64,000 bases of DNA from Octopus sinensis (lineage: Eukaryota), in assembly GCF_006345805.1 (NCBI RefSeq), contig NC_043010.1, positions 35,030,001 to 35,094,000 of the forward strand. The letters run 5' to 3'. Both the position numbers and the translations under genes were made by a program. Shown here one piece after another: positions 9,493-9,564 of the stretch (positions within the stretch are counted from its first letter, which is position 1; each line of letters starts with the position of its first letter). The notes beneath the pieces are model-generated. The model made no database searches. It worked only from the letters and a program-made list of their open reading frames with translations, and was not told the DNA's origin.

Positions 9493-9564
9493 ACCACTAC
9501 ACATGTTTCGATACAACATAGATTTACCTGTATAATAGGACCTAGTTGTATCTCCTCAGGTGAT
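9493..9564 (-). ncRNA. Minimal type I hammerhead ribozyme, canonical core
   Basis: ATCAC-CTGAGGA-GATACAAC(...)GTTGTATC-GAAAC-ATGT-GTA^GTGGT: 5-bp stem I (one G-U pair), 8-bp stem II, all core nucleotides canonical. Confidence 0.8.

What the first reader, a model, noticed from the sequence alone, without database searches (positions are those of the whole stretch)
9493..9564. Canonical hammerhead in sense orientation in the last intron, about 320 nt upstream of the final exon
Every catalytic core position is canonical, with a G10.1-C11.1 closing pair, an 8-bp stem II and a GUA triplet, predicted cut between 9498 and 9497. It lies on the transcribed strand of the METTL27-like pre-mRNA. Stem III (ACAUGUGU) is too short for a monomer but can pair with a second copy via two G-U wobbles. 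Established: intronic self-cleaving ribozymes exist in animal genes and can affect splicing. Inference: if active, it could cut nascent RNA before the last exon is spliced and tune expression.
Basis: partly seen in the sequence, partly recalled or inferred. Interest (0 to 1): 0.8.

Follow-up and report, generated by a model that had tools for sequence, protein, structure and literature searches.

The report
Retroelement-type hammerhead motif in octopus intron
The last intron of the Octopus sinensis METTL27 gene does contain a textbook hammerhead ribozyme sequence, but it has the build of the minimal hammerheads that Penelope-like retroelements scatter through animal genomes, so it is most likely an ordinary mobile-element relic and not a regulator of the gene.

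Summary
On the minus strand at 9564..9493 there is a type I hammerhead. Every core position is canonical. Stem I has 5 bp and stem II has 8 bp closed by G10.1-C11.1. The site is GUA, cutting between 9498 and 9497. It lies in sense in the last METTL27 intron, 322 nt before the last exon.

It is not chance. My descriptor finds 2 motifs in the window, against 0.026-0.033 per shuffled window, and only 1 in 2000 shuffles reaches these stem lengths.

The proposed function is not supported. The build matches minimal hammerheads of Penelope-like elements (PLEs): long helix II, short open helix I, and a tiny self-complementary helix III that needs a partner copy. No partner exists nearby. The hammerhead fold is about 10^-4 of the predicted monomer ensemble. 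Rfam Hammerhead_1 gives 11.9 bits against a threshold of 34. The orthologous Argonauta hians intron has no such motif.

The same gene holds a second hammerhead at 44020-44062, inside a PLE-style inverted duplication within (TA)n. A PLE endonuclease remnant lies at about 56.5 kb.

The best reading is a solo retroelement-derived hammerhead, inactive or barely active. Genome copy number and conservation in closer octopods could not be tested.

The parts
9560..9564 (-). Stem I, 5' strand (AUCAC, positions 2.5-2.1)
   Evidence: Pairs with GUGGU at 9497-9493 (C-G, A-U, C-G, U-G, A-U).
9553..9559 (-). Catalytic box 1, CUGAGGA (C3-A9)
   Evidence: Exact match to CUGANGA.
9510..9552 (-). Stem II hairpin. 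It has 8 bp, GAUACAAC/GUUGUAUC (9552-9545 with 9517-9510), closed by G10.1-C11.1. A 27-nt distal part (9544-9518) folds into a further imperfect helix.
   Evidence: The hairpin alone folds at -12.8 kcal/mol.
9506..9509 (-). Catalytic box 2, GAAA (G12 A13 A14 A15.1)
9499..9506 (-). Helix III segment ACAUGUGU. As a monomer it gives 2 bp plus a 4-nt loop. It is self-complementary over 8 positions with 2 G-U pairs, so it could form an intermolecular helix III.
   Evidence: The self-duplex is -6 to -8 kcal/mol.
9497..9498 (-). Predicted cleavage site: A17 (9498) ^ G1.1 (9497), with a GUA triplet
   Evidence: Follows from the core register. Cleavage itself was not tested.
9493..9497 (-). Stem I, 3' strand (GUGGU, 1.1-1.5)
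9176..11938 (-). Last intron of METTL27, the host of the motif. Donor is GTAATG at 11938 and acceptor is CAG at 9176.
   Evidence: tblastn of P0001 and reading of the splice sites. No Pfam domain in any of the three sense frames.
8994..9175 (-). Last coding exon of METTL27 (residues 176/177-237)
   Evidence: 100% match to XP_029644999.1.
44020..44062 (+). Second canonical minimal type I hammerhead in the same gene, in intron 2 and antisense: CCAC-CUGAAGA-UUGUC-GAUCAA-GACAA-GAAA-CGAUUGU-A^GUGG. It shows that retroelement-type hammerheads are present at this locus.
   Evidence: It lies at the inner end of a perfect 135-nt inverted repeat, 43859-43993 / 44025-44159, embedded in (TA)n.

Best explanation
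The 72-nt segment is a genuine hammerhead-type sequence of the minimal type I kind that Penelope-like retroelements (PLEs) and their non-autonomous derivatives carry. It is most likely the remnant of a fairly recent retroelement insertion into the last METTL27 intron, in the same orientation as the gene.

In their native setting such hammerheads work as pairs. Two adjacent copies in a tandem transcript form a shared, extended helix III, and each then cuts after H17 by the usual 2'-OH transesterification. Here there is a single copy with a 2-bp helix III and competing local folds. The intronic RNA is therefore expected to cleave not at all or only very slowly, and the motif has no selected role in METTL27 expression.

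Shown: the sequence anatomy, that it is not a chance match, its sense and intronic position, its absence from the Argonauta intron, and PLE-type hammerheads and PLE remnants elsewhere in the window.

Inferred: the retroelement origin of this particular copy, and its lack of activity.
For: 1. The architecture matches the published PLE minimal hammerhead: helix II of 7-8 bp (here 8), helix I of 4-5 bp with no defined loop 1 (here 5), and a small palindromic helix III (PMC4209133).
2. The motif is far above chance.
3. A second canonical minimal hammerhead lies in the same gene at 44020-44062. It sits in a perfect inverted duplication inside (TA)n. This is the PLE insertion signature described in PMC8557442: an inverted 5'-truncated copy and a microsatellite target.
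4. A PLE-like GIY-YIG endonuclease remnant lies at 56465-56921, with an inverted partial copy at about 58.1-59.0 kb. In other organisms its homologues are followed about 235 nt downstream by a minimal hammerhead and flanked by (TA)n (L003 and L004).
5. The candidate sits about 210 nt upstream of a (TG)n tract (9276-9289), with a TG-rich stretch about 200-260 nt on its other side. This is compatible with a microsatellite-targeted insertion, but the support is weak.
6. The orthologous last intron of Argonauta hians (1392 nt) has no CUGANGA box on the sense strand and no similarity to the octopus intron.
7. The hammerhead fold is 1.6e-4 of the predicted monomer ensemble. An upstream hairpin, GUGAU/AUCAC, competes for the stem I strand.
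8. Cephalopod genomes are already reported to hold hundreds of Rfam-level type I hammerheads as well as Penelope elements (PMC6962438).
Against: - No reverse transcriptase or endonuclease remnant lies next to the candidate.
- No second copy of its flanks exists in the 64-kb window.
- Its flanks are not significantly similar to those of the 44020 element (p about 0.12).
- The 27-nt distal extension of helix II is unusual.
- Genome-wide copy number could not be measured, so the retroelement origin of this copy is circumstantial.
- Some invertebrate hammerheads with a 2-bp helix III plus tetraloop do cleave as monomers (mussel, kobs about 0.1 per min; PMC7229834). Inactivity is therefore predicted, not shown.
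- The perfectly intact core and stems fit a young insertion, but they would also fit selection.
Confidence: 0.65

Rival explanations
1. This is a co-opted intronic ribozyme. The hammerhead cleaves nascent METTL27 pre-mRNA 322 nt before the last exon, alone or by pairing with a second nascent transcript, and so lowers or tunes production of mature mRNA.
For: - It is in sense orientation inside the intron.
- The core is flawless, and stem II and stem I are unbroken.
- Nascent transcripts at one locus could reach roughly micromolar local concentration. That is the range needed for a helix III duplex of -6 to -8 kcal/mol (the concentration estimate is my own arithmetic).
- Conserved intronic hammerheads exist in amniote genes (PMC6155905).
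Against: - It is not conserved in the Argonauta orthologue.
- The architecture is the retroelement type, for which single motifs show no detectable cleavage and dimers cleave only slowly (PMC4209133, PMC6765202).
- The hammerhead fold is about 10^-4 of the monomer ensemble.
- There is no match to the Rfam HH9 or HH10 models of the conserved intronic hammerheads.
- Introns cut by a hammerhead are still spliced normally in vivo (Dye et al. 2006 and Fong et al. 2009, as summarised in PMC2995048).
Confidence: 0.07
2. This is a chance match. An AT-rich, hairpin-rich intron happens to place CUGANGA and GAAA around an inverted repeat.
For: - Rfam Hammerhead_1 scores it only 11.9 bits, E=4.2 even in a 121-nt search.
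- The loose descriptor gives about 0.026 hits per shuffled window. Over a genome of about 2.7 Gb (size from memory) that would be roughly a thousand chance hits.
- No relatives of this copy were found.
Against: - At this copy's quality (stem I >=5, stem II >=8) only 1 of 2000 shuffles has a hit, and about 2% of hits have a self-complementary helix III. That gives of the order of 1e-5 per window, or less than one per genome.
- Permuted cores on the real sequence give 0.008 hits against 2 observed.
- A second independent hammerhead in the same window shows that real ones are common here.
Confidence: 0.04
3. This is part of a still-active retrozyme or PLE unit. That unit would be transcribed on its own and processed by the hammerhead into linear or circular RNAs, independently of METTL27.
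For: - Metazoan retrozymes with type I hammerheads are abundant and highly expressed in molluscs (PMC7229834).
- The intact core suggests youth.
- The neighbouring element at 44020 has 100% identical arms, so the family was active recently.
Against: - Retrozymes are tandem repeats of 170-400 nt. No tandem or second copy lies within about 800 nt, and no significant self-similarity was found.
- There is no adjacent ORF.
- No tRNA-like promoter module is present.
Confidence: 0.05

Closest known systems
Minimal type I hammerheads of Penelope-like elements (Cervera & de la Pena 2014, PMC4209133; Lunse, Weinberg & Breaker 2017, known to me only through its citation in PMC6765202)
   Same: - Type I topology with a canonical core.
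- Long helix II (8 bp) and a short open helix I (5 bp) without a recognisable loop 1.
- A very short, self-complementary helix III that implies action as a dimer.
- Occurrence in a genome that carries PLE remnants, and next to microsatellite-like sequence.
   Different: - It is not flanked by a PLE ORF or a recognisable pLTR.
- It has no inverted or tandem partner copy.
[quoted passage not shown]
- It carries a 27-nt distal extension on helix II.
Non-LTR retrozymes and satellite hammerheads (newt and axolotl, Schistosoma Sm-alpha, mussel; PMC7229834)
   Same: Type I hammerhead with a weak helix III (1-2 bp plus a tetraloop), low G+C, animal genome, and dimer-dependent cleavage in several families.
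   Different: Those are tandem arrays of 170-400-nt units with loop 1-loop 2 contacts in many families. Here there is one solo copy and no array.
Conserved intronic hammerheads of amniotes (RECK, CTCL, DTNB; Rfam HH9/HH10; PMC6155905)
   Same: Type I hammerhead, in sense orientation, inside an intron of a protein-coding gene. These too are thought to descend from retroelement hammerheads.
   Different: Those are conserved across birds, mammals and reptiles and keep the tertiary loop contacts. Here there is no conservation in the one orthologue available, no HH9 or HH10 match, and no evident loop-loop contact.

Membership tests
Hammerhead ribozyme, type I | Conserved core: C3 U4 G5 A6 N7 G8 A9, G12 A13 A14, A15.1-U16.1, H17 | tested here: met
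   All positions are canonical: CUGAGGA / GAAA / A...U / A17.
Hammerhead ribozyme, type I | Three helices around the core, with helix I open (type I connectivity) | tested here: met
   Helix I has 5 bp and helix II has 8 bp. Helix III has 2 bp as a monomer or 8 bp as a dimer.
Hammerhead ribozyme, type I | Rfam RF00163 score at or above the gathering threshold | tested here: not met
   11.9 bits against 34, E=4.2, seen only in a 121-nt search. The model penalises the 39-nt insert in helix II, and minimal hammerheads generally fall below it.
Hammerhead ribozyme, type I | Site-specific self-cleavage giving 2',3'-cyclic phosphate and 5'-OH ends | not testable with these tools
   This needs in vitro transcription or RNA end mapping.
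PLE-associated minimal hammerhead | Helix II of 7-8 bp, helix I of 4-5 bp, small palindromic helix III | tested here: met
   8 bp, 5 bp, and the self-complementary octamer ACAUGUGU. Criteria are from PMC4209133.
PLE-associated minimal hammerhead | [quoted passage not shown] | tested here: not met
   G10.1 pairs directly with C11.1. The feature is present in the L003, L005 and L006 hammerheads.
PLE-associated minimal hammerhead | Located in a pLTR next to an RT / GIY-YIG ORF, often with tandem or inverted partial copies | tested here: not met
   There is no endonuclease similarity near it, no Pfam domain in the three sense frames of the intron, and no partner copy. Solo copies are reported as widespread (PMC4209133), so this weakens membership but does not exclude it.
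PLE-associated minimal hammerhead | Multi-copy family in the host genome | not testable with these tools
   No octopus genome is searchable here. The motif is single-copy in the 64-kb window. Scans of metagenome and viral contigs were empty.
Non-LTR retrozyme | Tandem repeats of 170-400 nt, each with a hammerhead | tested here: not met
   No tandem copy is present. Local alignments to both flanks are at shuffle level.
Conserved intronic hammerheads (HH9/HH10 type) | Conserved at the orthologous intron across species | tested here: not met
   The Argonauta hians last intron has no CUGANGA box and no similarity. Closer octopods could not be obtained.
Conserved intronic hammerheads (HH9/HH10 type) | Sense orientation within an intron of the host gene | tested here: met
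   The gene and the motif are both on the minus strand, and the intron is 9176-11938.

The most novel reading that the evidence does not exclude
A retroelement hammerhead has been domesticated in the octopus lineage. It is kept intact in the last METTL27 intron of Octopodidae, cleaves the nascent transcript (as a monomer helped by factors, or by pairing between nascent RNAs at the locus), and modulates use of the terminal exon or 3'-end formation. That would be the first co-opted self-cleaving ribozyme in a mollusc gene.
Probability: 0.05. Interest if true: 0.6.

Novelty: new member of a known kind. Interest (0 to 1): 0.25.

Why it matters
On the best reading it matters little. Minimal type I hammerheads are already known to be scattered in very large numbers through metazoan genomes by Penelope-like elements and retrozymes, and a solo copy in an intron is an expected by-product.

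It has some use as a documented octopus example, together with the cleaner PLE-style element at 44020-44062. It is also a caution that a perfect hammerhead core in an animal intron is not by itself evidence of gene regulation.

It would become interesting only if the motif proved to be conserved at this position in other octopods and to cleave in vivo.

Tried and rejected
- Rfam scans. Nothing reached gathering thresholds over the whole window. Nothing hammerhead-like appeared at E<=10 over 701 nt. The only match is a sub-threshold Hammerhead_1 alignment in a 121-nt search.
- A second copy in the window. blastn with word size 9 found only microsatellite hits. Smith-Waterman alignment against both flanks stayed at shuffle level.
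- Homology between the candidate's flanks and the 44020 element was not significant.
- Closer orthologues. The O. vulgaris METTL27 locus returned no DNA because the gene range is too long. An exact look-up of the last-exon ORF was not on record. The protein search found only O. sinensis/vulgaris, Argonauta and a transcript-only cephalopod cluster.
- Pattern scans for the motif in metagenome contigs (two scans) and viral contigs (one scan) gave 0 hits.
- Sampling more octopus DNA through mariner transposase homologues. The contigs obtained (L006, L007) share no other repeat with the window, so they are not octopod.
- Profile search with the 50-aa pseudo-ORF that spans the motif, as a proxy for a multi-copy element. 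It returned only a spurious bacterial RCC1-repeat protein.
- A covariance model built from the other hammerheads found here was abandoned. MAFFT misaligned the GAAA box of one of the four sequences.
- tRNA-like SINE module: none found.
- Pfam domains in the sense frames of the intron: none.
- GIY-YIG was not detected by Pfam in the window's endonuclease remnant. Two of its homologues do carry PF01541.

Full report
**What is there**

The window is identical to Octopus sinensis chromosome record CM016872.1. The minus strand carries the gene for methyltransferase-like protein 27 (XP_029644999.1). Mapping the protein gives five coding exons:
- 55606 to about 55433
- 48164 to about 48042
- about 15495 to 15355
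- about 12032 to 11939
- 9175 to 8994

The last intron is 9176-11938, with a GTAATG donor and a CAG acceptor.

On the same strand, 9564..9493 reads AUCAC CUGAGGA GAUACAAC [27 nt] GUUGUAUC GAAA CAUGUGU A^GUGGU. This is a type I hammerhead:
- Every core position is canonical.
- Helix II has 8 bp and is closed by G10.1-C11.1. It is prolonged by an imperfect distal helix, and the hairpin alone folds at -12.8 kcal/mol.
- Helix I has 5 bp.
- The site is GUA, with the cut between 9498 and 9497, 322 nt upstream of the last exon.

That includes the remark that ACAUGUGU gives only 2 bp plus a tetraloop on its own, but pairs with a second copy over 8 positions with two G-U pairs.

**Is it more than chance?**

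Yes. A generic descriptor was used: CUGANGA, helix II of at least 4 bp, GAAA, A15.1...U16.1-H17, and helix I of at least 4 bp. It finds two motifs in the window.
- Dinucleotide shuffles give 0.033 per shuffle in 300 shuffles and 0.0255 in 2000.
- Only 1 shuffle in 2000 had helix I >=5 and helix II >=8. About 2% of shuffle hits had a short, fully self-complementary helix III. The expectation for this quality is therefore about 1e-5 per window.
- The reversed window gives no hit. 120 descriptors with permuted core boxes, run on the real sequence, give 0.008 hits on average.

Rfam does not validate it as a family member. Hammerhead_1 aligns end to end, but at 11.9 bits against a gathering score of 34. 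The cause is the long insert in helix II and the short stems, a general property of minimal hammerheads.

**What kind of hammerhead**

The build matches what Cervera & de la Pena (PMC4209133) described for the minimal hammerheads of Penelope-like elements (PLEs). Helix II is larger than usual (7-8 bp). [quoted passage not shown] Helix III is small and palindromic, so that two copies must pair to form the active double hammerhead. Those authors report massive, widespread occurrence in metazoan genomes, no detectable cleavage of a single motif, and only low activity of dimers. The review PMC6765202 says the same.

The rest of the window supports this context.

*A second hammerhead.* A second canonical minimal hammerhead lies at 44020-44062 on the plus strand, in intron 2 of the same gene and antisense to it.
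- It is the inner end of one arm of a perfect 135-nt inverted repeat, 43859-43993 / 44025-44159.
- The mirror copy begins at U4 and so lacks C3 and the helix I strand.
- The whole structure is embedded in (TA)n.
- An inverted 5'-truncated copy and a microsatellite target are the PLE insertion signature described in PMC8557442.

*A PLE endonuclease remnant.* A GIY-YIG endonuclease remnant lies at 56465-56921, with an inverted partial copy at about 58.1-59.0 kb.
- Its homologues include two proteins that carry Pfam PF01541.
- In contigs from other organisms (L003, L004) the endonuclease ORF is followed about 235 nt later by a minimal hammerhead and flanked by (TA)n.
- A further contig (L006) shows an inverted pair of minimal hammerheads whose helix III is ACAUGU.

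*Published cephalopod data.* The giant squid genome paper reports 235 Rfam-level Hammerhead_1 matches as well as Penelope elements (PMC6962438).

**What argues against simply filing it as a PLE hammerhead**

- This copy is alone. No reverse transcriptase or endonuclease remnant lies on its strand in the intron.
- It has no tandem or inverted partner.
- Its flanks are not significantly similar to those of the 44020 element.
- It lacks the unpaired base before helix II.
- Its 27-nt helix II extension is unusual.
- I could not measure genome copy number, because no octopus assembly is searchable with these tools. The indirect routes all came back empty.

The retroelement origin of this copy is therefore an inference from architecture and neighbourhood. 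It has not been demonstrated.

**Does it act on METTL27?**

Nothing supports that.
- The only orthologous intron I could obtain is from Argonauta hians (L002 17852-19244, 1392 nt). It has no CUGANGA box on the sense strand and no similarity to the octopus intron, although the flanking exons align at 76-81%.
- In secondary-structure terms the hammerhead fold is 1.6e-4 of the monomer ensemble. The minimum free energy structure keeps helix II but pairs the helix I and III strands differently. An upstream hairpin (GUGAU/AUCAC) competes for the helix I strand. Other minimal hammerheads score similarly low, so this shows dependence on a partner or on helper factors and is not specific to this copy.
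- The intermolecular helix III is worth only -6 to -8 kcal/mol, which implies micromolar affinity. With one copy per pre-mRNA, pairing would require two nascent transcripts. This is conceivable at a busy locus, but it is not the arrangement these ribozymes normally use.
- Even efficient hammerhead cleavage within an intron leaves splicing intact in vivo. Only much faster ribozymes abort processing (work of Dye et al. and Fong et al., as summarised in PMC2995048).

One caution applies in the other direction. Some invertebrate retrozyme hammerheads with a 2-bp helix III plus tetraloop do cleave as monomers (mussel, kobs about 0.1 per min; PMC7229834). Inactivity is therefore a prediction.

**Verdict**

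The motif is a real, well-formed hammerhead sequence. It is most probably a young solo relic of a Penelope-type retroelement or one of its non-autonomous derivatives, sitting by accident in sense in the last METTL27 intron, with little or no self-cleavage and no selected function (confidence about 0.65).

The regulatory reading remains possible but unsupported (about 0.05-0.07). The decisive data are a copy-number census and a check of orthologous introns in other octopod genomes, plus a simple in vitro cleavage assay comparing monomer and dimer. It is a new member of a known kind, and the interest is low to moderate.

Noticed in passing
window 43859-44159 (hammerhead at 44020-44062, + strand): A second canonical minimal type I hammerhead lies at the inner end of a perfect (100%) 135-nt inverted repeat embedded in (TA)n. 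The mirror copy on the minus strand starts at U4, so C3 is lost. This looks like a very recent PLE-style insertion with an inverted 5'-truncated copy and no ORF. It sits in METTL27 intron 2, with the intact copy antisense to the gene.
   Followed up: partly
window 56465-56921 (+) and about 58117-59007 (-): A Penelope-like GIY-YIG endonuclease remnant is interrupted by a (CT)n tract and has a tail-to-tail inverted partial copy. It lies only about 800 nt upstream of METTL27 exon 1. No hammerhead was detectable 3' of it, although homologous copies in other organisms (L003, L004) have one about 235 nt downstream.
   Followed up: partly
window 62850-63920 (-); L006 9681-10800; L007 10062-10812: A mariner/Mos1-like transposase remnant is 92-93% identical at the DNA level to copies on ENA contigs that share no other repeat with the octopus window. 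This is compatible with horizontal transfer of the element between distant hosts.
   Followed up: partly
L006 12430 (-) and 12895 (+): An inverted, diverging pair of identical minimal hammerheads lies 465 nt apart in an unidentified eukaryotic contig: helix III ACAUGU, an unpaired U before helix II, and helix I of 8 bp. The head-to-head layout is the same as in the window's 44020 element.
   Followed up: no
window 28620-29230: A tandem satellite of 61-62-nt units, about 10 copies at 63-93% identity, creates long spurious open reading frames on the minus strand. Related sequence occurs at 42422-42659 in inverted orientation.
   Followed up: no
window 1470-2551 (-), 12522-12779 (+), 15923-16288 (-): Other mobile-element debris is present: hAT-like ORFs (weak Dimer_Tnp_hAT match), a LINE-type RVT_1 fragment, and a second mariner-like DDE fragment. 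A SINE-like repeat also occurs in at least 8 copies (for example 6952-7082, 8287-8417, 12189-12319 and 15108-15238).
   Followed up: no
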